Program-made: the position numbers and the translations under genes | Part shown: positions 2,015 to 60,799 of the stretch, in pieces | Position numbering within the stretch: the stretch's first letter is position 1 | Layout of the letters: each line of letters opens with the position of its first letter | The notes under the pieces: model-generated | The model's database searches: none | What the model was told of the DNA's origin: nothing | The model's input: only the letters and a program-made list of their open reading frames with translations | IMG/VR virus record: IMGVR_UViG_3300049215_000771 | Coordinates: 434,001 to 498,000 of that record | Reading direction: 5' to 3' (one strand) | DNA length: 64,000 bases

Positions 2015-2542
2015 TTAGAAGGCTTGTAGCGGCCCGGCATTGCCTCCCAGCGGTGCCTGAGCGTCAGGCGGTGGGCCTCCTGGCGCTGGGGGCGGCGGGC
2101 CGGCTGGCTGCTTCATTGTACCAGGCATTGTATCAGATTTCTTTTTTTCTGGCCCTGCCGTGCCCTTCATTTCTTCCTCACCCTCGGCCTTGTCGTCACC
2201 AGCCAGCTTGTGCAGCGGAACGCCTAGCTTGCCGCTCAATTGCTCTAACTCACTGGCGGCAGAAGAAATAACATTGGGCAGATCATCACGCTCGTCAATA
2301 GCCTTCATGATGGCGACCCCGATCTTCTGGAGATGAATCAGATGTTTCTTCTCCTCACGGGGCCACTGGCTATGCAAAATGCGCCGGATTTGATTGACAA
2401 TTTTCTCCGAGAAGCGGGTCAGGTCACGAGTACCCATGTGTTTGGAGTCGTCTCGCAACTCCTGGGCTGCCGTGAGAATATCACCGATCTTCTGTCCAAG
2501 ATACGCACGTTGTTCAATCAGTAGGAATTCTTTGAACCTCAT
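2015..2542 (-). CDS. Putative internal virion protein with a capsid-targeting-like N-terminus
   Basis: Starts MRFKEFLLIE, resembling T4 internal-protein targeting sequences; Pro/Gly-rich tail; TAAATA 5 nt upstream of the ATG. Confidence 0.5.
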   Translation of the reverse strand: MRFKEFLLIEQRAYLGQKIGDILTAAQELRDDSKHMGTRDLTRFSEKIVNQIRRILHSQWPREEKKHLIHLQKIGVAIMKAIDERDDLPNVISSAASELEQLSGKLGVPLHKLAGDDKAEGEEEMKGTAGPEKKKSDTMPGTMKQPAGPPPPAPGGPPPDAQAPLGGNAGPLQAF

Positions 2543-2546
2543 GCCC

Positions 2547-4175
2547 TTATTTAGAGTTATCTGGCGATATTCTCGTCAAAGCAGCAGCAATCAGCCCACG
2601 AAACAACGGCGCAGCCGCCGTCAGCCGACTTTTGAACTCCGGGTGAGCCTGCGTACCGATGAAATAAGGGTGTAGATTCCTGTCCAATTCCATCATTTCG
2701 ATGAGATCACTGCCTGGGTTTTTCCCACTTACCTTGAAACCTTTCGCCTCGAACTGAGAGATGTATTCCGGGTTGACTTCGTAGCGATGACGATGCCTCT
2801 CCTTCACCAACTTGGTTCCGTACAACTCCATCGCCAAGGAATCTTTCACCAAATCACAATCATAAGCCCCCAGGCGCATGGTGGCAGATTTCTTCTCCAG
2901 ACCCTCCTGGCCCTCTACGAAGTGAATAACAGGGTTCTTGGTGTCCTTGTTGAATTCCAGGCTGTGGGCGTCAACATGCCCCAGCACATTCCTGGCAAAC
3001 TCGATCACGGCGCACTGGAGGCCCAAGCAGATGCCCAGGAAAGGTATTTTCTTCTCTCGGACATACTGAATGGCTTTGATCTTCCCCTCGATGCCCCGAC
3101 TGTCAAAACCTCCGGGAACGATGATGCCATGCAGCCCTTCAAAGTGCTTGGCGAGTCCACGATTGTCTTTGTATTTCTCCAGGTCTTCGGCCTTGATCCA
3201 GCGAACATTCACCTTCACGTCATTGGCAATACCAGCGTGGATCAAAGCCTCCTTCAGCGACATATACGCTTCGTCACAGTTGTCATACTTGCCGAATACG
3301 CCAATCTCAACGCCCTGAAGGTGATTGTTGACGTACTTCTCCACGACTTCCCGGTACTTGTGGATGCTGCACCGGGAACGATTCAGGCGAAACAAATCAA
3401 CAAACATATCATCAACTTGACGTTCGTAGAAGCAAATAGGGACTTGGTAGATCGAGGAAACGTCGGGAGCGTCAAAAACTTGGGTTCGGGGCACGTTGGT
3501 CGTTCGAGACACTTTGTCGATGATTTTTTCCGGTAGCTGGCGGTCCACTCGGCAGAAAATCACATCGGGTTGAAGGCCGTGCCGTTGAAGTTCCTTGACG
3601 GAATTTTGCAAGGGCTTTGTCTTGAACTCCTTGATGGTATTCACCCACAAAATGGGAGCCACCAAAGCAACAAGAACATCGTCCCGGTACTCACCCTTGA
3701 ACTGCCTCATGGCCTCGTAGAAGGCGAAAGACTCACTATCGCCTACCGTCCCGCCAATCTCGGCGATGACTATATCGTTGGATTTTCCCAACTCCAGAAG
3801 CCGGTCCTGAATTTTGTCTGTCAGATGCGGCATGAGTTGGACGGTCTGGCCCAGGAACTTGCCCTTCTCCTGCTCGTCGATCAGTTCCTTGTACAATGTG
3901 CCAGACGTGGCGATATTGTCTTTTGACACAGTGATGCCACAGATGCGCTCGTAGTGGCCCAGGTCCAGGTCTGTTTCTGTACCATCATCGCACAAGAAAC
4001 ACTCGCCATGCTCACGAGGGGCGAGAATGCCGGCATTGACATTGAGGTAGGGGTCGAACTTGATGATGGTGACAGTGTGCCCACGCAGCTTGAGCAGCAA
4101 CCCAAGGCTTGCAGCCGAGACTCCTTTCCCTGTTCCACTGATTACACCGCCAGCCACAATGACGAATTTTGCCAT
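2547..4175 (-). CDS. pyrG: CTP synthase
   Basis: GGVISGTGKG, KFDPYLNV, GICLGLQ (catalytic Cys), RHRHRYEVN and QAHPEF motifs. Start taken at MAKF (4175). Confidence 0.97.
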   Translation of the reverse strand: MAKFVIVAGGVISGTGKGVSAASLGLLLKLRGHTVTIIKFDPYLNVNAGILAPREHGECFLCDDGTETDLDLGHYERICGITVSKDNIATSGTLYKELIDEQEKGKFLGQTVQLMPHLTDKIQDRLLELGKSNDIVIAEIGGTVGDSESFAFYEAMRQFKGEYRDDVLVALVAPILWVNTIKEFKTKPLQNSVKELQRHGLQPDVIFCRVDRQLPEKIIDKVSRTTNVPRTQVFDAPDVSSIYQVPICFYERQVDDMFVDLFRLNRSRCSIHKYREVVEKYVNNHLQGVEIGVFGKYDNCDEAYMSLKEALIHAGIANDVKVNVRWIKAEDLEKYKDNRGLAKHFEGLHGIIVPGGFDSRGIEGKIKAIQYVREKKIPFLGICLGLQCAVIEFARNVLGHVDAHSLEFNKDTKNPVIHFVEGQEGLEKKSATMRLGAYDCDLVKDSLAMELYGTKLVKERHRHRYEVNPEYISQFEAKGFKVSGKNPGSDLIEMMELDRNLHPYFIGTQAHPEFKSRLTAAAPLFRGLIAAALTRISPDNSK

Positions 4176-4250
4176 GACATTCCCGCTTTCTTCACACAAT
4201 AGATAAGTAATATCCTACCGTATTTAGGGTGAACCCGCCAGGTGTGAAAA

Positions 4251-4285
4251 GGAAAACGGCGGGTCTAAAAACCCGCCGTTTTTCC
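4251..4285 (-). terminator. Intrinsic terminator hairpin after nrdA
   Basis: GGAAAACGGCGGGT-CTAAAA-ACCCGCCGTTTTTCC inverted repeat with T-runs. Confidence 0.8.
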
Positions 4286-4331
4286 TTATAGAAACGCCTC
4301 CGCAGGCCCGCTGGCAATACAACGAAGGACG

Positions 4332-5975
4332 TTAGCTTTCACAATTAGTACAAGCCAGGATGTTGCGACTAAATGCCTGTGCAGCATTGATGGAAATCTG
4401 GTAGTACAACGACTTGATTCCCATTTGCCACGCTTCGATGATGAGCGCATTCACATCCTTGATGGGAATCGAGGGATGAATCATCAAGTTGAGTGACTGC
4501 GATTGGTCAATGTACTTCTGCCGGCTTGCCGCCTGCATAATGACTTCCTTCGGGCTGATCTCGGCGAAGGTTTTGAACACATTCTTCTCCAACCCGGAAA
4601 GAAAATCCAGATGTTGAACGCTTCCTCCGTGTTTCAGAATGTCGGCCCACACTTCATCCGTGTTCTTTCCTTTCGCTTCAAGAACCTGCTCCAGATGCGG
4701 ATTTTTGACGGTCCACTTCCCCTTCTGCAAATCCTTGATGAAATAATTGGTTTTGTGTGGCTCGATACCTTCCGACACCTGCCCCAAAATAAAAGCCGAC
4801 GACTTGGTGGGCGCAATGGCAAGCAACGTGGTGTTACGCCGACCATATCCCTTCAGGACTTCTGGTTCGCCATATTCCTCGGCCATCTTCGCAGAAGCGG
4901 CGTAAGCCCTCTCCTTGATGTTCTTGGCGACTTCGACGTTGATCTGTTTCGCCTCCAGGCTCTCGAAGGCGATCATCTTGCTTTGAAGGTAGCTGTGCCA
5001 ACCAATCCAGCCAATACCGAGCGCACGGTGACGCTGGGCGAACTTGACAGCCCGCTTCATGAACCCGATCTTGCTGGCTTTCTGGATGAATTCCGTCATC
5101 ACAGCATCCAGGAAGTAAGTCAGCAACTCGACGGCGTTGGTATCTTTCCACTCGTCATACCGGAAGATATTCATGCTCGACAAATCACACACGAAGGACT
5201 CGTCACACGAGTCAGGAAGCATGATCTCGCTGCACAAATTCGAGTGCGAGATTCGCATCTTCTTGTTCTTGTAGCAGTCCACCGTGTTGTTGTTCGCATT
5301 GTCGCCGAACATGATGTACGGGAAGCCGATGTTGGCCCGGCATTCAAGTACCTTGGCCCATACTTTCCGCTTCTCGGCGTCCCCAGCAATCATCTCCTTC
5401 ATCCACCAGTCGGGCACGACCACCCCAAAAGACAAATCTTGAATGGGATTGCCCTCGCTCCGCATGGCGAGGAATTCCATGATGTCTTTGTGGTCGATGT
5501 CCAGGTAAGCGGCGAAATTGCCACGTCGGGTCCGACCCTGGGACACCACGTTGATGAGAAGGTCGAACAACTGCATGAAGTGAACACTGCCAGATGACTC
5601 GCCATTACGACGAATCTTAGAACCACGCCCACGCAGGTTGCCGAAGTAGCCAGACGTACCGCCGCCGTGCTTCGTCATCATCATGACTTCGGCGTGCGTG
5701 TAGGCAATGTCTTCGGTGTCATCAGCCATGTAGCTGCCGAAACACGAGATCGGCAGGCCACGGTCATTGCCAAAGTTCGTCCAGATGGGCGTACTGAGGC
5801 TGTACCAACCTTTCTGAATGTTTTCCTTGAACGCCTGGGCAAAACCAGGTTTGTTGAGAAGTTTTTCTGCTGCCCCGCAGATTTCATTTACCCGTTCATC
5901 GACGGTCTGCCCGTCCAAGTAGTCCCTTTCGAGAAACTGCTGAGACGCTTCTGTTAGCCATGTGTAACCTGTCAT
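4332..5975 (-). CDS. nrdA: Ribonucleotide reductase class Ia alpha subunit (short, no ATP cone)
   Basis: PISCF, SNLCSEI, APTKSSAFI, SQSLNL and KSLYY motifs. Confidence 0.95.
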   Translation of the reverse strand: MTGYTWLTEASQQFLERDYLDGQTVDERVNEICGAAEKLLNKPGFAQAFKENIQKGWYSLSTPIWTNFGNDRGLPISCFGSYMADDTEDIAYTHAEVMMMTKHGGGTSGYFGNLRGRGSKIRRNGESSGSVHFMQLFDLLINVVSQGRTRRGNFAAYLDIDHKDIMEFLAMRSEGNPIQDLSFGVVVPDWWMKEMIAGDAEKRKVWAKVLECRANIGFPYIMFGDNANNNTVDCYKNKKMRISHSNLCSEIMLPDSCDESFVCDLSSMNIFRYDEWKDTNAVELLTYFLDAVMTEFIQKASKIGFMKRAVKFAQRHRALGIGWIGWHSYLQSKMIAFESLEAKQINVEVAKNIKERAYAASAKMAEEYGEPEVLKGYGRRNTTLLAIAPTKSSAFILGQVSEGIEPHKTNYFIKDLQKGKWTVKNPHLEQVLEAKGKNTDEVWADILKHGGSVQHLDFLSGLEKNVFKTFAEISPKEVIMQAASRQKYIDQSQSLNLMIHPSIPIKDVNALIIEAWQMGIKSLYYQISINAAQAFSRNILACTNCES

Positions 5976-43630: not shown

Positions 43631-44236
43631 TCACTTCGGGGCCACCTTCCTGAACTCGGTAGCCAACTCATTGTAGATGGGTTGGTACTTGGTTTTGAAG
43701 TAAGCCCAATCATAATGCGGGTCGTTCAGGATGTCAAACCAGAATTGGTTCGCCGCCCCGAAATCCAAAATCTGCCCATGATCGGCGATTTGCTTGCCGA
43801 AGTTGAGTATTCTCAACGAGTGGAATAGGCTTTTCCAACCGATGTAGAAGTCTTTCTCAACCTCGATCTTCTTCTTCGCCTTCACGAAACTGTGAGACGC
43901 CTTCGCCGACAACTCGTTGCGAAGGCTGCCCAGGTTCAGCTTGAACTTGAATCGCTTCTTCACCTGACCGTCAGGATGGAAATATCCCTCCAGGGTGTGA
44001 ATCTTGTGCAGGTCCAGTTGTTGCTGCCAGTCCCGCTTGTTGTAAATGTGAATGTTCACATTGTCGTGGCGGAACTCAGTCCCGGTATCGGCACGACGAT
44101 TCTCAGGCACGATAGCCATGTAGTCGTAGTCCGACTTGTCGCTATGCGTACCATAAACCCGGCTGCCGTAGGGGACAAGAACCACATCCCTGTCCGACAG
44201 CCCGTAGGTCGCCTTGAAATAGTCAATGCCGTTCAT
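43631..44236 (-). CDS. Pol-beta-superfamily nucleotidyltransferase
   Basis: YGSRVYG...SDYDY (GS...DxD); start MNGID. Confidence 0.75.
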   Translation of the reverse strand: MNGIDYFKATYGLSDRDVVLVPYGSRVYGTHSDKSDYDYMAIVPENRRADTGTEFRHDNVNIHIYNKRDWQQQLDLHKIHTLEGYFHPDGQVKKRFKFKLNLGSLRNELSAKASHSFVKAKKKIEVEKDFYIGWKSLFHSLRILNFGKQIADHGQILDFGAANQFWFDILNDPHYDWAYFKTKYQPIYNELATEFRKVAPK

Positions 44237-45960
44237 GACATCACTGAGGGCAGGCCGGACTAATATGGTCGAACCACAACGGGGCCGGCTCACAATTCCC
44301 GATATTGACGAGACGCTGAACTGCACCGTCATCTTTGTGGATCGAAAAACTCACACCGCAAACCAGCGACATGGCTGTATACTCAATGCCAGTCGTATCC
44401 AGGTAAGCCTTCACACCTTTCTGTTGCTCGTCGGCGTGATCCTTGCGCCATTGTCTTTTGTCGTAAACGCCTGCGGGCACGTCATCCGGGTCGTCGAAAT
44501 GAAGGTACACGTCAAGCCGATCACCATCATCCTCGACATGCCTCCGCAGATGCGGCGTACACCGCTTTTCCTGGGCTGCCCATTCAGCAAGTGTCATGTT
44601 GGCCTCAGTTTCATCCTCGCCCGTAATGCCAGCCTGCTTTTCAGCAACGGGCTGTCCTGGCGAGTCTTCCTTTCGTCGTTATCGTCGATGCTCCTGTGTT
44701 GCTTCTCTCCGACAACCACCAAGTCATCGGGATTGTAACCATAACGAAGGTTACTCGGCTGCCACCGCACATCCACTTCCGGCCCCTGGAAGGTTCCGTA
44801 GTCCAGAAGCCCATCCACAACGCCGATGCAATCACCAAACTCTTCAATATGTTCAGCGCAACCATTGCCGATCATGGCCTGCTTGAGTTCTTCCGACATT
44901 CTTACTAGGGTGCCAGGTTTCATAGCTTCTCAATCTGCTTACAAAGGTCACGAAGGAACCTGTTCCTCCTGGCTTCGATTGCCTCCCGAAGCATCGACAC
45001 GAGTGCGCCGCCGTGATCCTGAACCGTCACCCGCCCCATCTCCCAGCCTCCCCTGGAGAGAATATGGAAGCTGTCGTCTACACTAAAAGACGCCTCAGCC
45101 CGCTCAAGGTTCAGATTAAAAACTTCCGGCTCGCCCCCGCTGGTGTGCCAGATGAAGCGGTCTTCGTTGGTTGCGTGGACCAACTCTTCGAGGATGACGG
45201 AAACTTTCTCGGTGTCAAGTAACGGCATCTTGCGTCTTCTCGTGCTTCAAGCAATGGTAGTGTTCCAGACCACGGGTCGGGAAAACGTAGTACCCACAGT
45301 GTTCCGTGAAGACAGCAATTTCTTCTCGCTGCTCGTCACGCACCAGGAAAGCGTAGTTGAAGAACATATTCGAGCCGTCCTCAAACTGGATCGACACGAA
45401 CGAATTGAACTGGCTCAGGTCGAACCAGTTGTTCTTCTTGATGTAGTCCTGCCAGTGTTTGGGCAAGTTGTTGAAAAACTTGTCAATGACGTTCATTTCT
45501 TCTTCCTGTATCGACCGTCGATCTCTTCTTCCCGGAACTCATCCACCACGTTTTTCTCGACGTGATGGAGTTTGTACCAGTGTTCCTTATGGATTCCAGT
45601 TGTGTAGCGACCGACGACCACGGCAATTGCGCCATTCCAGTAGTAGGGCGTCTGGCCGTCCTTGGATCGTCCCTTCAGGACACGAACTTTCTGACCTGGC
45701 TCGTACAAATAGGGTTTAGGGTCCGGGCGGTTGTATGCTTTCACCAACAGGTCCATGAAGGTGTCGCTCATACCTCAGTCAACTCCAATCCAAGGTCTTC
45801 ACACAACTCGCTGGCAGCCTCCATCGAGCGGTTGTAGACCGTTTTACCTTGCCGATCATTGATGAACAATTCACCGCCGTTGTAGTAGCCAGCAAGTCCA
45901 TGATCGGATTTCTTACAGGCTTCACGCAATTGTTTCAGCGCCAACATTATCTTCTCCTTG

Positions 45961-46938: not shown

Positions 46939-48141
46939 TCATTTCTTCAACACCACCGAAGAACCATCGCTCCGATCCCGAATCTCACAACCCAGGTCGA
47001 TGATCCTTCTTTTCAGGGCATCGGCCCCAGCCCAATTTCGCTGCCGCCTGCATTCCTCTCGGAGTTTGGCAAGCTGGATGGCGTCGTCGGGAGCATCCTC
47101 ATCCGAGAACATCTGGAAACCGAGTAATTCGGCTTGCTCCAGGCTGGGATTCACGAAAGTCGCTGCGATGGCTTCCGAAGTATTCAGGTTGGCGTCCATC
47201 GCCTTGGCGAAATCTTCCGAAACTCCATGTTCTGGTGCCGACTTCAGCCGATTCCTCAAAGCCTTCCACTGTTGCGCCGAAGTCCCATCCAACAACCCTT
47301 CAACGGATAAAGGTTTGGCATAACTGGCCGAGAGAATCCAGAAGCGAATCACGTTGGGGTCCGTGCCATTCGCCCGATAGTCCCGGATGTTGACGGCGTT
47401 CCCCTCGGATTTTCCCATCCTCCTGTCGCCGATCTGAACCATCCCATTGTGGAGCCAGATGTCCGCCAAGGGCGATCCGGCATGAAGGCATTCGGACTGA
47501 GCGATCTCATTCTCGTGATGCGGAAACTTCAAATCGTCGCCGCCCACATGAATATCCACCGTGAACCCAATGGTCCTTTCAATCATGATGGAGCATTCAA
47601 GATGCCAACCAGGTCGCCCCTTGGGGAATTCAGACTCATTGGCCTTCGGCCCCTTCCACAAAACGAAATCTTCCGCCGTTTTCCGACGTGAAAGTTTCCC
47701 ATATCCAGGGAACGTCTTCGTTTTGAAGCGAATGTCGCCATCTTTGTGGTAAGCATGGCCACTTTCGACAAGCGCCGTAGCTGCAACCTTCATCGGGATC
47801 ATGTAGTCCGTCACACGGGGGTACAAGTCCGCCTTCTGGACGTTCAGCCAGCCCATGTCATTGAAATAGTCGTCGATGAAGCGGTCAGCCAGTTCTTTGC
47901 TGGTCACGCCCTCCTTTGCCGCCCGATCCACGATTTTGTCGTCCACGTCCGTAAAATTCTGAACGTGGTAGACCTTCTGCCGGCGTTTGAGCCAGCGTTT
48001 CAGCACGTCCCACACAACATAGCTCCTGGCGTGTCCCAGGTGGCAGTAGTCGTAGACCGTTACACCACAAGCGTACATAGTGATCGGGCGGTCACTAGGG
48101 ACTTCTTTTTCACGCCGGGTTAGGGAGTCGTGCAGTTTCAT
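46939..48141 (-). CDS. cysS: Cysteinyl-tRNA synthetase (compact)
   Basis: YACGVTVYDYCHLGHARS, NFTDVDDKI, GRPGWHLECS, FPHHENE and MGKSEGN motifs; start MKLHD at 48141. Confidence 0.95.
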   Translation of the reverse strand: MKLHDSLTRREKEVPSDRPITMYACGVTVYDYCHLGHARSYVVWDVLKRWLKRRQKVYHVQNFTDVDDKIVDRAAKEGVTSKELADRFIDDYFNDMGWLNVQKADLYPRVTDYMIPMKVAATALVESGHAYHKDGDIRFKTKTFPGYGKLSRRKTAEDFVLWKGPKANESEFPKGRPGWHLECSIMIERTIGFTVDIHVGGDDLKFPHHENEIAQSECLHAGSPLADIWLHNGMVQIGDRRMGKSEGNAVNIRDYRANGTDPNVIRFWILSASYAKPLSVEGLLDGTSAQQWKALRNRLKSAPEHGVSEDFAKAMDANLNTSEAIAATFVNPSLEQAELLGFQMFSDEDAPDDAIQLAKLREECRRQRNWAGADALKRRIIDLGCEIRDRSDGSSVVLKK

Positions 48142-48177
48142 GCGCCCATAGTACCCCGATTTAGAAGAAGTGTAAAG

Positions 48178-48256
48178 TAGCCTCGGTGGGAGTCGAACCC
48201 ACATCCTTTCGGCACCGGGTTTAAGCCGGCTGCGTATACCGTTCCGCCACGAGGCC
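48178..48256 (-). tRNA. tRNA-Leu(TAA)
   Basis: GCCGG-CTTAAAC-CCGGT, V arm, A73. Confidence 0.9.
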
Positions 48257-48301
48257 ATTCAACCAAATCGGTTGAAAGTTGGTGTTTTCAACCGATTTGG
48301 T

Positions 48302-49369
48302 TTATCTAATCTCGACCTTCAATTCCTTCATCCGGTCACGAAGCTGTTGCTGACGGGCGTTGATTTCCTCGTTCGTCAGCACCCGATCCATCGACCTGTA
48401 GGTGATGCGGTAGCAATGAGATTCCCGCTCACCTTTTTTGAAAGAATCCAGCAGCTTGACACTTTCAACCAGATCGCCGTGTAGATCACGAACAATCTGG
48501 TAGAAATCGTTCTCGCTGTAGCCAGCCGGAATCCAGAACGCCATGTCTTTGACACACGGCGGCTGGACCGAGAATGGCTTGAATTTAGAGTCCAGGTCTT
48601 TGAACTGGTTGAGGAAGCGTTCGTCCTCACTCCAGAACAATCGGATGTCCGGGATGTCGAAAACAAGCATTGCCAGCCGCTCCAGGCCAACACCGAACGC
48701 CCAGCCCTGGGTGTAGTCACTGTAGTTGTCACCAAGAGGCCCAAGGGCTTCACAGCGCTTGATAACATCGGGATGGACGATGCCACAACCCGCTACTTCC
48801 AGCCACTCGCCATTCCATTCGATCTCCAACTCCCAAGAAGGGTTCGTGAACGGGAAGTAGGAGTCCACGAATCTGTAGTTCAACTGCCGGTTATGTGGGC
48901 TGTACGGGATGTTGAGAACTCGTTCTATCATGTCGAACATATGTTCCTTCAACATCCTCTCAAGGTCCAATGTCTGATATTTCGCCTTGTGAAAAAGGCC
49001 CACGCCTTCAACCTGGTGGAACACCGGGTAATGCGTGCGATCAATGGTGTCTCGCCGGTACACGTCGCCACAGACCAGGAACTTCATGTGTCCCTTGTTG
49101 ATGAGCATGTGCTGATGGGCGCTGGTATGCGTCCTCAGAACGTGCTTCTCGTCAACGTAGTAGGTGTCAGAAGGCCGGCGAGAGGGATGGTCGGGTGGAA
49201 TCAGCAGATGGTCGAAGTTATCTTCCACTGTCACCACCGGCCCGAACGTCTCGTAGATTTCGTGGCCGGGGAAGGCCATATAGATAGCCTTCTTGACAAT
49301 TTCGAGCGGGTGTCGTTCCTTCAGATGGAGGTTACGCCCCATTTTTTCTTTGATGCTCGGCGGGATCAT
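48302..49369 (-). CDS. pheS: Monomeric (mitochondrial-type) phenylalanyl-tRNA synthetase
   Basis: HPSR..SDTYY, LRTHTSAHQ, YRRD.ID.THYPVFHQ, YFPFTNPS and GWAFGVGLERL motifs, fused to a C-terminal FDX-ACB (KDMAFW...SHCYRITYRS..R.LTNEEIN). Confidence 0.93.
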   Translation of the reverse strand: MIPPSIKEKMGRNLHLKERHPLEIVKKAIYMAFPGHEIYETFGPVVTVEDNFDHLLIPPDHPSRRPSDTYYVDEKHVLRTHTSAHQHMLINKGHMKFLVCGDVYRRDTIDRTHYPVFHQVEGVGLFHKAKYQTLDLERMLKEHMFDMIERVLNIPYSPHNRQLNYRFVDSYFPFTNPSWELEIEWNGEWLEVAGCGIVHPDVIKRCEALGPLGDNYSDYTQGWAFGVGLERLAMLVFDIPDIRLFWSEDERFLNQFKDLDSKFKPFSVQPPCVKDMAFWIPAGYSENDFYQIVRDLHGDLVESVKLLDSFKKGERESHCYRITYRSMDRVLTNEEINARQQQLRDRMKELKVEIR

Positions 49370-49536: not shown

Positions 49537-49627
49537 CGGAAGAGAAGGGAATTGAACCCTTGCCGGACAATTAAGCCGGGCCAGTTTTCGAGACTGGTGC
49601 AGCAATCACAACATCTGCCTCTCTTCC
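49537..49627 (-). tRNA. tRNA-Ser(CGA)
   Basis: CCAGT-CTCGAAA-ACTGG, V arm, G73. Confidence 0.9.
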
Positions 49628-49629
49628 TT

Positions 49630-50207
49630 GGAGCCGCACTACGACCATCGTGGCCCCCACGCCTATCGTAGTTTTCGCAACCGGGCCTGAGAACGGCTTT
49701 TGACGGCCAACACAGGACTTAACTGGTGCTGGATGCGGCATAAATAGGGACCGTGCTGCGACCATCATAGTCCTCGACGAATGTATCGCAACTTTTCCAG
49801 CCGGACTTACCGAACGTGTTTTCGTTCTTGCCCCCGGCGCTCCAGGCGAAGGTCTTTTTCAACCATAGGAGTCGGTAAGGCAGCTTGAACTATTCACTCG
49901 GATACTGTTTGGATACGGCCCTCGTCGAACAGTCCTCCCAGGCTTGTAGGATTTCTCGTTCGGGCAAGGTTGTGCGCACAACCTTGTCGGGTCCAAAGCG
50001 ACTCAGCCAGTGTGCTATTACGCCAAAAGGATTGCACACCAGGTAGCCTAACCTGGGTGCGTTTACTCCCACTCTTTGAATGGTGGCTGCCTCTAAGCCA
50101 ACATCCTGGCTATCTCCGTTTAGCTTTGGCGGCGAGTTTATACAGCCCGCCGTGATATATCCCGATTCCTTCATCCTGGTGGATGCCCAACCATTTCGAT
50201 GAAGGAA
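49630..50207 (-). ncRNA. Candidate large structured RNA between two tRNAs
   Basis: No convincing ORF. Many hairpins: TTCCTTCATC/GATGAAGGAA, a 22-nt palindrome at 49965-49986, and ACTACGA/TCGTAGT enclosing CGTGG/CCACG. Contains the 23S-like domain. Confidence 0.6.
49998..50115 (-). ncRNA. 23S rRNA GTPase-associated-centre (H42-H44)-like domain with a 47-nt hairpin insertion
   Basis: AGATAGCCAGGATGTTGGCTTAGAGGCAGCCACCATTCAAAGAGT-[47 nt]-GCGTAATAGCACACTGGCTGAGTCG aligns with recalled bacterial 23S nt ~1046-1115. Confidence 0.85.
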
Positions 50208-50208
50208 G

Positions 50209-50291
50209 TGTCCAAGGTGGGAGTCGAACCCACAAGTCCTTGCGGACGCCAGCCCCTCAAGCTGGTGCGTTTACCGTTTCGCCACTTGGAC
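50209..50291 (-). tRNA. tRNA-Leu(GAG), long V arm
   Basis: CCAGC-TTGAGGG-GCTGG, A73. Confidence 0.92.
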
Positions 50292-55678: not shown

Positions 55679-55755
55679 TGCCCAGGGTGGGACTCGAACC
55701 CACAAGACCCTCGTTCTGAGCGAGAGATGTCTGCCTATTTTTGCATCACCTGGGC
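55679..55755 (-). tRNA. tRNA-Leu(CAG) with a short variable loop
   Basis: TCTCG-CTCAGAA-CGAGG; variable region GTCTT; A73. Confidence 0.85.
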
Positions 55756-55870: not shown

Positions 55871-57052
<1,182 letters not shown>

Positions 57053-57735: not shown

Positions 57736-57826
57736 TTGGCAAGGTGGGATTCGATACCCACACGGTAGATTCGTCAACCTACCAACCCCCTCTAGCGGGG
57801 GCTGCGTCTTCTTCCGCCACTTGCCA
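57736..57826 (-). tRNA. tRNA-like RNA with an aberrant anticodon loop (GCTAGA) and 8-nt T loop
   Basis: TGGCAAG/CTTGCCA, A73; CCCCC-GCTAGA-GGGGG; 8-bp V arm; GTGGG-TATCGAAT-CCCAC. Confidence 0.6.
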
Positions 57827-60717: not shown

Positions 60718-60799
60718 TGCCTCCCCAGGGGATTGAACCCTAACCTTCTGCTTTTCAGGCAGATGTGCAGACCAAATGGAACCACTACACCAGAGAGGC
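60718..60799 (-). tRNA. tRNA-Phe(GAA) with an enlarged D loop
   Basis: TCTGC-CTGAAAA-GCAGA; D region GTGTAGTGGTTCCATTTGGTCTGCAC. Confidence 0.75.

What the first reader, a model, noticed from the sequence alone, without database searches (positions are those of the whole stretch)
49998..50115. A copy of the ribosome's GTPase-associated centre embedded in the tRNA array
About 70 nt match 23S rRNA H42-H44 as I recall it. They include the A1067 loop (CTTAGA), the A1095 loop (GTAATA), an H42 stem re-paired by compensatory change (TAGCCAG/CTGGCTG) and the Kt-42-like AGA/GAG elements. The flanks are not rRNA-like. A 47-nt self-contained hairpin (50024-50070; GGGA..GCACCCAGG-loop-CCTGGTGTGC..TCCT) is inserted at ~1090/1091. 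This domain binds uL11 and uL10-(bL12)n, recruits EF-Tu/EF-G and is contacted by RelA and thiostrepton (established). Inference: a ribosome-stalk mimic that titrates L10/L11, decoys RelA or ribosome-targeting defences, or scaffolds the phage EF-Tu. I know of no description of this in phages.
Basis: partly seen in the sequence, partly recalled or inferred. Interest (0 to 1): 0.93.

Follow-up and report, generated by a model that had tools for sequence, protein, structure and literature searches.

The report
Phage RNA mimicking ribosome GTPase centre
A 532-kb phage carries, among its tRNA genes, a small RNA gene that copies the part of the ribosome's large RNA that binds protein uL11 and docks translation factors; the same gene, always with an extra arm at one fixed point, recurs unannotated in well over a hundred other phages, including cultured ones, so it looks like a new and widespread phage tool aimed at the host's translation machinery.

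Summary
On the minus strand at 50119-50001, 62 of 75 bases match E. coli 23S rRNA 1042-1116 (H42-H44). A 47-nt hairpin at 50070-50024 lies between U1090 and G1091, and the flanks are not rRNA.

It is not a one-off or a chimera. Two pattern scans and a covariance model gave about 190 matches, of which 129 are non-redundant full elements. They occur in viral contigs, prophages or MAGs of many phyla, and cultured phages such as Serratia BF, Pseudomonas pf16, Aeromonas 4_4572, Cronobacter GAP32, Pectobacterium CBB and Xanthomonas XacN1. None is annotated.

All share:
- a covarying closing stem (H42);
- an almost invariant H43/H44 core with the fold-critical bases;
- covariation of the 1082:1086 tertiary pair;
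- an insert of 24-364 nt at the same bond, closed by a covarying stem and followed by UUUG.

The elements are co-oriented with phage tRNAs, often within 30 nt of one. No protein gene is conserved nearby.

Rfam 15 has no such family, and ten full-text searches found no description.

Best reading: a stable RNA processed out with the tRNAs that folds like the uL11-binding domain and acts in trans as a mimic or decoy. The fold is strongly supported. The binding partner and the benefit to the phage are inferred.

The parts
50001..50119 (-). Whole GAC-mimic RNA element (E. coli 23S numbering 1042-1113, plus the insert)
   Evidence: cmscan LSU local hit 50119-50001. Family model R1 hit 50115-50001, 93.7 bits. 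Numbering.
50113..50119 (-). 5' side of a Kt-42-like kink-turn (C-stem AC, bulge GGA, G1047 A1048). Specific to this copy.
   Evidence: Read from the sequence against the E. coli and Rfam structure lines. Not conserved in the family: 2 of 128.
50106..50112 (-). H42 5' strand (1049-1055, UAGCCAG)
   Evidence: Pairs with 50010-50004. The H42 columns covary across the family.
50080..50104 (-). H43 hairpin (1057-1081) with the 1067 loop. A1067 is at 50094.
   Evidence: Near-identical to rRNA. Pairs 1058:1080 and 1057:1081 covary. G1059, U1060, G1071 and C1072 are invariant or nearly so.
50075..50079 (-). Junction 1082-1086 (UCAAA in this copy). It contains the 1082:1086 tertiary pair, here U:A.
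   Evidence: 1082:1086 is UA 79, CG 35, AU 11 and other 4 in 129 elements.
50071..50074 (-). Proximal H44 5' strand, G1087 A1088 G1089 U1090
   Evidence: Invariant in 98 distinct rows. G1087-C1102 and U1090-A1101 are favoured over a local alternative.
50024..50070 (-). Variable arm (47 nt): stem GGGA/UCCU, internal loop, 9-10-bp hairpin, then the conserved UUUG linker (50027-50024)
   Evidence: Coordinates. In the family the first four pairs of this arm covary, the first two being paired in 99-100% of rows, and the arm is 24-364 nt long.
50012..50023 (-). Distal H44 hairpin (G1091-C1102) with the 1095 loop GUAAUA. A1095 is at 50019.
   Evidence: G1091, C1092, G1093, A1098, G1099, C1100 and A1101 are 100% conserved, and A1095 is 94%, in the 34 elements found through the 5' half alone.
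50004..50010 (-). H42 3' strand (1104-1110, CUGGCUG)
   Evidence: Complement of 50112-50106.
50001..50004 (-). 3' side of the Kt-42-like kink-turn (G1110 A1111, then G1112 U1113)
   Evidence: Specific to this copy.
50208..50291 (-). Upstream neighbour on the same strand: tRNA-Leu(GAG), 88 nt before the element
   Evidence: ARAGORN. Rfam tRNA, 56.6 bits.
49537..49627 (-). Downstream neighbour on the same strand: type-II tRNA (anticodon reads CGA, Ser), 373 nt after the element
   Evidence: Rfam tRNA, 42.3 bits, E 2.7e-7. Not called by ARAGORN.

Best explanation
The element is a gene for a small stable RNA of a previously unannotated phage family. Three steps are shown or strongly supported.
1. 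It is transcribed in the same direction as the phage tRNA genes. It usually sits between them, so the tRNA-processing nucleases would release it.
2. Its two ends pair into a private closing stem (H42).
3. The rest folds like the 58-nt uL11-binding domain of 23S rRNA (H43, H44 and their tertiary contacts). One extra arm of variable size leaves the H44 stem between U1090 and G1091.

The remaining steps are inferred. Being a near-exact structural copy of the GTPase-associated centre, the RNA binds host uL11. It exposes the A1067/A1095 face off the ribosome and works in trans as a mimic. It would compete with ribosomes for something that normally engages this site, either uL11 itself or an enzyme, toxin or factor directed at the centre. 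No partner gene is conserved next to it, so the partner is most likely a universal host component. That would also explain why one RNA design serves phages of many bacterial phyla.
For: Sequence match to rRNA H42-H44 and the position of the insert.

Family size:
- 55 loci from a 5'-half pattern.
- 33 bacterial genome or MAG loci, of which about 24 carry both halves.
- 129 non-redundant full elements.
- About 190 model hits.

Structure:
- RNAalifold finds compensatory changes in 15 of 23 pairs.
- On 82 distinct rows, 93.3% of cells are paired against 71.1% in shuffles. The covariation score is 0.493 against 0.125 (0 of 500 shuffles reach it) and at most 0.141 for slid partners.

Fold-critical bases are conserved:
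- U1060, G1087, A1088, G1089, U1090 and C1072 are about 100%.
- G1071 is 99%.
- G1091-C1100 and C1092-G1099 are 100%.
- The tertiary pair 1082:1086 covaries, UA/CG/AU.

Factor-face bases are conserved but less strictly: A1067 81-88%, A1095 94%.

The family is not a recent capture from host rRNA:
- All members have A1101 where the Rfam bacterial consensus has U.
- Real E. coli 23S scores only 51.8 bits on the family model, against 60-124 for most full-length members and 93.7 for the window.

tRNA linkage:
- All 828 tRNA genes in the loci are on the element's strand and none is opposite.
- 63 of 129 elements have a tRNA within 100 nt, and 35 have an upstream gap of 30 nt or less.

No conserved neighbouring protein: the largest cluster covers 8 loci.

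Precedent for an enzyme aimed at this site: the toxin Tre23 ADP-ribosylates H44 at 1095-1098 (PMC8661411).
Against: - No expression, processing or binding data exist for any member.
- uL11 binding is inferred from conservation alone.
- The extra arm interrupts H44, and I could not model whether it clashes with uL11 or with factors.
- A1067 is not invariant (G in about 10-14% of members), so the factor-binding face is under somewhat relaxed constraint.
- Conservation of the core could reflect RNA-only folding needs rather than protein binding.
- The benefit to the phage is unknown.
Confidence: 0.55

Rival explanations
1. Decoy for host weapons aimed at the GTPase-associated centre. The free RNA, alone or with uL11, soaks up a defence or competitor enzyme that would otherwise modify or cut H43/H44 in ribosomes. 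This would parallel the way phage tRNAs offset tRNA-cutting defences. It is a specific version of the best explanation.
For: The element lies in tRNA arrays, which are regarded as putative anti-defence units (abstract of PMC12803027, listed). Neighbours include CCA-adding enzymes, homing endonucleases and, in a Flintibacter prophage, a Pnkp-RNA ligase repair fusion. A bacterial toxin that modifies exactly H44 1095-1098 exists (PMC8661411). The 1095 loop is conserved.
Against: No anti-phage system is known to target the GAC. The repair-gene association is weak: RNA ligase in 2-3 loci and CCA enzyme in 5 of about 129. A decoy must be very abundant to protect thousands of ribosomes.
Confidence: 0.25
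2. A uL11 sponge that blunts the stringent response. The RNA competes for free or exchangeable uL11. Ribosomes lacking uL11 cannot activate RelA, so (p)ppGpp stays low during infection.
For: The conserved part is exactly the minimal uL11-binding domain, not the uL10 site. The requirement of uL11 for RelA activation is established knowledge from relC mutants.
Against: Stripping uL11 from assembled ribosomes is not known to be efficient. Ribosomes without uL11 translate more slowly, which would also cost the phage. There is no link to (p)ppGpp genes in the neighbourhoods.
Confidence: 0.12
3. A scaffold for a payload. The GAC fold is only a very stable folding module, possibly clamped by uL11. 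It holds and protects the variable arm, which carries the real, lineage-specific function.
For: The arm varies from 24 to 364 nt and contains recurrent sub-modules. A CACCCC-tetraloop-GGUAAGG module occurs in about 21 of 101 inserts, against a maximum of 9 for any 7-mer in shuffles. An SRL-like hairpin occurs in two inserts. Other tRNA-array RNAs (GOLLD, ROOL) are RNA-only assemblies (PMC12286853).
Against: The shortest arms, 24-47 nt as in this window, are plain hairpins with little room for a function. Yet the core is equally conserved there. Loop bases A1067 and A1095, which I recall are not needed for folding, are also conserved.
Confidence: 0.15
4. A cis-acting element of the tRNA operon transcript, acting as a processing, stability or termination signal, with no trans function.
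For: Strict co-orientation with, and proximity to, tRNA genes. In some cultured phages the H42 stem is followed by a T run.
Against: 38 of 129 elements have no tRNA within 3 kb. This includes Serratia phage BF, which has no tRNA within 2.5 kb, and several prophages. A processing signal would not need an exact copy of the rRNA tertiary core. No terminator-like site follows the window copy.
Confidence: 0.05
5. A dead fragment of host rRNA picked up by recombination, or an assembly chimera.
For: 83% identity to rRNA over 75 nt.
Against: About 130 independent copies share the same non-rRNA signatures: A1101, the UUUG linker, and the arm at one bond. Compensatory changes and private closing stems occur throughout. 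Copies are present in finished genomes of cultured phages.
Confidence: 0.01

Closest known systems
GTPase-associated centre of bacterial 23S rRNA (H42-H44; the 1051-1108 uL11/thiostrepton-binding domain)
   Same: Same helices, the same loop sequences (1067 and 1095 loops), the same fold-critical bases and the same covarying tertiary pair 1082:1086. 62 of 75 bases are identical to E. coli.
   Different: It is a separate gene of about 115-450 nt rather than part of a 2.9-kb rRNA. H42 is a private hairpin stem of arbitrary sequence. It has A1101 instead of U. An extra arm plus a UUUG linker is inserted between 1090 and 1091. The uL10 kink-turn is not conserved in the family.
rRNA-mimicking leaders of ribosomal-protein operons (for example the L10 leader RF00557, or the 23S-methyl motif RF01065)
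   Same: The principle is the same: an RNA outside the ribosome imitates an rRNA protein-binding site.
   Different: Those leaders are cis-regulatory 5' UTRs of the gene for the protein they bind, and they copy only a few features of the site. This element has no r-protein gene downstream, lies among tRNA genes and copies the whole domain almost base for base. No leader family reaches its gathering score.
GOLLD and ROOL RNAs (large structured RNAs of phages and prophages found near tRNA islands)
   Same: Same genomic niche: phage tRNA arrays, no dedicated protein gene, variable regions, unknown function (PMC12286853). One locus, L011, has both a GOLLD and this element.
   Different: There is no sequence or structure relationship. 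The Rfam GOLLD hit in L011 is 3.4 kb away from the element. GOLLD and ROOL are RNA-only cages with no rRNA resemblance.
Trans-acting molecular mimics such as 6S RNA (open-promoter mimic) and the phage ToxI-like RNA that mimics an antitoxin (PMC3475682)
   Same: An abundant small RNA would act by imitating a macromolecular binding site so as to divert a protein.
   Different: The imitated object here is a functional centre of the ribosome, and the diverted partner is not yet known.

Membership tests
Bacterial LSU rRNA (Rfam RF02541) | Score at or above the curated gathering threshold (50 bits), with the match extending over the rRNA domains | tested here: not met
   33.2 bits, and only model positions 1083-1154 of 2925. 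There is no hit at the gathering threshold in the 64-kb window.
Bacterial LSU rRNA (Rfam RF02541) | Flanking sequence is rRNA (H41 upstream, H45-H46 downstream) | tested here: not met
   The flanks match nothing. BLAST similarity to 23S records is confined to 43-46 nt. In relatives the similarity to one another stops at the element.
Ribosomal-protein leader (autoregulatory rRNA mimic, e.g. L10 leader) | Lies in the 5' UTR of the ribosomal-protein gene whose product it binds | tested here: not met
   Downstream on the same strand are a tRNA and then a PheRS-like gene. Across about 129 loci no conserved ORF is adjacent.
Ribosomal-protein leader (autoregulatory rRNA mimic, e.g. L10 leader) | Match to a curated leader model | tested here: not met
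   The only leader hit is L2-Alphaproteobacteria at 17.8 bits against a threshold of 37.8, E 0.13, and it lies beside the element.
GOLLD / ROOL | Match to RF02032 or the ROOL model over the element | tested here: not met
   No such hit in the window. The one GOLLD hit in the related loci is at a different place.
Group I intron or intervening sequence within an rRNA exon | The insert has an intron catalytic core, and the flanks are a functional rRNA gene | tested here: not met
   No intron model hits the element. Inserts are as short as 24 nt. The flanks are not rRNA.
New family defined here (model R1: phage GAC-mimic RNA) | Closing stem H42 of free sequence that covaries | tested here: met
   In the window, UAGCCAG pairs with CUGGCUG. 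In the family, 7 of 8 H42 pairs show compensatory changes.
New family defined here (model R1: phage GAC-mimic RNA) | rRNA-like H43 and H44 core with G1087-A1088-G1089-U1090, A1101 and the 1082:1086 pair | tested here: met
   The window has all of them. For family frequencies.
New family defined here (model R1: phage GAC-mimic RNA) | A stem-closed arm inserted directly after U1090, followed by UUUG/UUUA before G1091 | tested here: met
   Window 50070-50024. The family's first two arm pairs are paired in 99-100% of rows and covary.
New family defined here (model R1: phage GAC-mimic RNA) | Model score clearly above that of genuine rRNA | tested here: met
   Window 93.7 bits. E. coli 23S 51.8 bits.
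New family defined here (model R1: phage GAC-mimic RNA) | Binds uL11 or adopts the GAC tertiary fold | not testable with these tools
   Only inferred from conservation of the fold-critical bases.

The most novel reading that the evidence does not exclude
Phages of many bacterial phyla encode a free-standing copy of the ribosome's GTPase-associated centre. It forms an RNP with host uL11 and acts as a decoy. It would either shield ribosomes from host or competitor enzymes that attack this site, or disable RelA-dependent alarm signalling. This would be the first viral mimic of a functional centre of the ribosome, and a third class of tRNA-array RNA beside GOLLD and ROOL. In a rare subclass the extra arm adds a sarcin-ricin-like hairpin, which would imitate the whole factor-binding site.
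Probability: 0.4. Interest if true: 0.93.

Novelty: categorically new. Interest (0 to 1): 0.88.

Why it matters
If the inference holds, phages manipulate translation with an RNA that impersonates part of the ribosome itself, not only with tRNAs, factors and ribosomal proteins.

It gives a concrete and testable function to a conserved unannotated gap in the genomes of cultured phages, including the GAP32/CBB/BF jumbo group, XacN1, pf16 and Aeromonas 4_4572.

It points to an unexplored battlefield, the uL11/GTPase centre, in phage-host conflict. It may also lead to undiscovered host defences that target this site.

The family is a natural experiment on the GAC fold. It shows which bases must stay, that H44 tolerates a helix inserted at one bond, and that the 1082:1086 pair covaries outside the ribosome. 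This is useful for RNA structural biology and for designing uL11- or thiopeptide-binding RNA modules.

Practically, annotation pipelines should stop ignoring these elements or mistaking them for rRNA contamination.

Tried and rejected
1. Assembly chimera or captured rRNA fragment. Rejected by the family data.

2. My own early misreading. I first took loci with long mutual alignments to be real rRNA operons. The 3'-half scan showed that most are related phages carrying the element. Only L044 is genuine rRNA.

3. uL10/kink-turn mimicry as a family feature. A search for the tandem-GA kink-turn beyond H42 found it in 2 of 128 elements, no more than control dinucleotides give.

4. A sarcin-ricin-loop copy in the arm as a general feature. 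Found in 3 elements against 1.2 expected at loose stringency, and in 2 against 0.06 at strict stringency. It is real in L091 and L106 but not general, and cmscan does not call it.

5. A local alternative hairpin in which the linker G pairs with C1102, which RNAalifold proposed. Three of the four natural variants break it, so the rRNA-like G1087-C1102 pairing is preferred.

6. A conserved protein partner next to the element. None was found. The largest ORF cluster covers 8 loci. The neighbours are homing endonucleases, CCA-adding enzyme, TerD and an AAA ATPase.

7. A phage-encoded uL11. A scan of viral contigs with E. coli RplK found nothing, but that method only reaches close relatives, so it is uninformative.

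8. A promoter or terminator flanking the window copy. Nothing above chance.

9. Known Rfam families. There were no hits at gathering or E-value thresholds on the window, 15 + 15 related loci and one long-arm member.

10. Literature. Ten full-text searches and two genome papers of carrier phages gave no description.

Full report
**What is in the window**

The window is part of IMG/VR contig IMGVR_UViG_3300049215_000771, which is 532,729 bp. Its second half is a minus-strand block of tRNA genes interspersed with translation genes. These include CysRS at 46939-48258, a single-chain PheRS-like gene at 48302-49369 and EF-Tu at 55871-57052.

The reported element lies on the same strand. It sits between tRNA-Leu(GAG) at 50291-50208 and a type-II tRNA at 49627-49537.

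cmscan aligns 50119-50001 to positions 1083-1154 of the bacterial LSU model. That is H42-H44, at 33.2 bits and E 4.5e-8, with 55 nt where the model has 8.

Against E. coli rrlB, 40 of 49 bases match for 1042-1090 and 22 of 26 for 1091-1116. The extra 47 nt occupy 50070-50024, between U1090 and G1091. The strand folds significantly better than shuffles, with z = -3.6.

**It is a family, not a curiosity**

- An exact-pattern scan of viral contigs with the 5' half returned 55 loci.
- In these loci the similarity to one another stops at the edges of the element. After AAAGAGUG comes a stretch of variable length, and then YUUUGGCGUAAYAGCACAC followed by the complement of the upstream flank.
- A narrower version of the 3'-half pattern hit 33 loci in bacterial genomes and MAGs. 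About 24 of them have both halves. They include isolates (Flintibacter muris DSM 110149, Clostridiaceae strain 9, Bacterium D16-76) and MAGs from Bacillota, Bacteroidota, Bdellovibrionota, Chloroflexota, Nitrospirota and Patescibacteria.
- In F. muris the element lies in a prophage, between a tail-fibre gene and a Pnkp-RNA ligase fusion.
- BLAST against GenBank phages finds it in cultured phages: Serratia BF, Erwinia pEa_SNUABM_12/19/44/47/49/50 and Kaldavass, Yersinia fHe-Yen9-03/04, Cronobacter GAP32, Pectobacterium CBB, Xanthomonas XacN1, XbC2 and XaC1, Pseudomonas pf16, Milchi, Astolliot and UNO-G1W1, and Aeromonas 4_4572. In every case the annotation reads 'none' or 'hypothetical protein'.
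- I verified complete elements in BF, pf16 and 4_4572.
- Altogether there are 129 non-redundant full elements and about 190 model hits.

**Structure**

In 98 distinct rows the two halves align without gaps.

- **H42** is free in sequence but paired. For example, 1054:1105 is GC 66, AU 30 and UA 2, and 1051:1108 is AU 27, UA 26, GC 21 and CG 10.
- **H43** covaries at 1058:1080 and 1057:1081.
- **The variable arm** starts directly after U1090. Its first two pairs are formed in 99-100% of rows, with the first being GC 57, AU 26, UA 12, GU 2 and CG 1.

RNAalifold on 35 diverse members recovers H42, H43, the arm stem and the H44 hairpin, with compensatory changes in 15 of 23 pairs.

On the model-based alignment of 82 distinct sequences, 93.3% of cells are paired against 71.1% in shuffles. 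The covariation score is 0.493, against 0.125 in shuffles (0 of 500 reach it) and at most 0.141 when partners are slid.

The bases that I recall as holding the GAC tertiary fold together are invariant or nearly so. These are U1060, A1088, G1071, C1072, G1091-C1100 and C1092-G1099. The tertiary pair 1082:1086 covaries: UA 79, CG 35, AU 11 and other 4.

To avoid ascertainment bias, I measured the 3' half only in elements found through the 5' pattern, and the 5' half only in elements found through the 3' pattern. A1095 is 94% and A1067 is 81%.

RNAalifold's alternative pairing of the linker G with C1102 is contradicted by 3 of the 4 natural variants. The rRNA-like proximal H44 is therefore preferred.

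**Independence from host rRNA**

Every member has A1101, pairing with U1090, where the Rfam bacterial consensus and E. coli have U. Every member has the UUUG/UUUA linker and the arm at the same bond, whatever the host.

On the family model, real E. coli 23S scores 51.8 bits. Most full-length members score 60-124 bits, and the window copy scores 93.7. The family is therefore an old, self-standing lineage and not a series of repeated captures.

**What is special about the window copy**

- Its arm is among the shortest: a 47-nt insert forming a plain hairpin.
- Its similarity to rRNA runs further down H42, into a complete Kt-42-like kink-turn.
- That kink-turn is not conserved in the family, occurring in 2 of 128, which is no more than control motifs give.
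- A uL10 site therefore cannot be claimed for the family, and it remains only a possibility for this copy.

**Context**

- All 828 tRNA genes in the loci are on the element's strand and none is opposite.
- 63 of 129 elements have a tRNA within 100 nt, and 35 begin 30 nt or less after a tRNA 3' end.
- 38 of 129 have no tRNA within 3 kb.
- No ORF family is shared by more than 8 loci. The recurrent neighbours are typical companions of tRNA arrays: GIY-YIG, HNH and PD-(D/E)XK endonucleases, CCA-adding enzyme, TerD and an AAA ATPase.
- No promoter or terminator stands out around the window copy. This fits co-transcription with the tRNAs and release by tRNA-processing enzymes, which is an inference.

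**Mechanism**

Shown: this is a conserved structured RNA gene whose core carries the secondary and tertiary signatures of the uL11-binding domain.

Inferred: it binds host uL11, displays the 1067/1095 face, and so competes with ribosomes for a ligand of the GTPase-associated centre.

I consider three concrete versions:
- a decoy for enzymes that attack this site. The precedent is Tre23, which ADP-ribosylates H44 at 1095-1098 (PMC8661411);
- a uL11 sponge that blunts RelA activation;
- a folding scaffold for a functional arm.

Cis-acting and junk explanations fit the data poorly.

**Comparison with known systems**

- It resembles rRNA-mimicking leaders in principle, but it is not in front of a ribosomal-protein gene and it copies the entire domain.
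- It shares its niche with GOLLD and ROOL but is unrelated to them.
- Rfam 15 has no model for it.
- Ten full-text searches and the genome papers of XacN1 and CBB do not mention it.
- The library does not hold most subscription journals, so a prior description cannot be excluded.

**Verdict**

The interpretation as a ribosome-centre mimic is supported at the level of structure. The specific partners are untested. I rate it categorically new, with high interest.

Noticed in passing
L091:7739-8120 (-) and L106:3688-4068 (-): Two long-arm members (about 308-nt inserts) carry, at the same relative position, a hairpin of the form AGUAC-GNRA-GGAA closed by a short stem. This is a sarcin-ricin-loop look-alike. 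Together with the core it would imitate both halves of the ribosomal factor-binding site. It occurs in 2 elements against 0.06 expected, and cmscan does not call it.
   Followed up: partly
inserts of about 21 of 101 non-redundant family members (e.g. L038, L070, L072, L141, pf16 = L160): A recurrent module sits near the 3' end of the variable arm: CAC, then a 3-bp hairpin capped by a GNRA or UAAC tetraloop whose stem covaries, then UAAGG. Its role is unknown. The window copy lacks it.
   Followed up: partly
L185:1114-1301 and 2522-4714: In the Flintibacter muris DSM 110149 prophage the element lies between a tail-fibre gene and a 730-aa polynucleotide kinase/phosphatase-RNA ligase fusion (an RNA-repair enzyme). 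There is no tRNA within 8 kb.
   Followed up: partly
window 48302-49369 (-): A 355-aa single-chain PheRS-like protein: class II core domain plus the ferredoxin-fold anticodon-binding domain. As I recall, this is the architecture of mitochondrial PheRS rather than of the bacterial two-subunit enzyme. It sits next to a CysRS gene (46939-48258).
   Followed up: no
window 57736-57826 (-): ARAGORN calls a 91-nt tRNA with anticodon CUA (labelled Pyl) directly abutting a tRNA-Leu(GAG). It is a possible amber-suppressor tRNA, which would hint at stop-codon recoding in this phage.
   Followed up: no
window 49537-49627, 55679-55755, 60726-60791 (-): Three tRNA genes are found by the Rfam tRNA model (42.3, 40.7 and 32.1 bits) but not by ARAGORN. 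The window therefore holds at least 17 tRNA genes, all on the minus strand.
   Followed up: no
window 49966-49987: A perfect 9-bp palindromic hairpin (CAAGGUUGU GCGC ACAACCUUG on the minus strand) lies about 15 nt downstream of the element and has no U run. It may be a stability or processing hairpin.
   Followed up: no
L080 (3988-4087 and 4811-4944) and L171 (3994-4346 and 5202-5388): Some loci carry two copies of the element within about 1 kb, so the gene can be duplicated within one phage.
   Followed up: no
window 43631-44332 (-): A 233-aa ORF has weak hits to nucleotidyltransferase / RlaP (RNA-repair pathway pol-beta family) domains. It lies within the tRNA region.
   Followed up: no
GenBank 'phage' records such as KT319643, OR847495, KM209255, OR844775: Many short records labelled as phages in the INPHARED collection are plain 23S rRNA fragments, that is, host contamination. 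They are the only strong BLAST matches to the element's 5' half and could mislead annotation.
   Followed up: no
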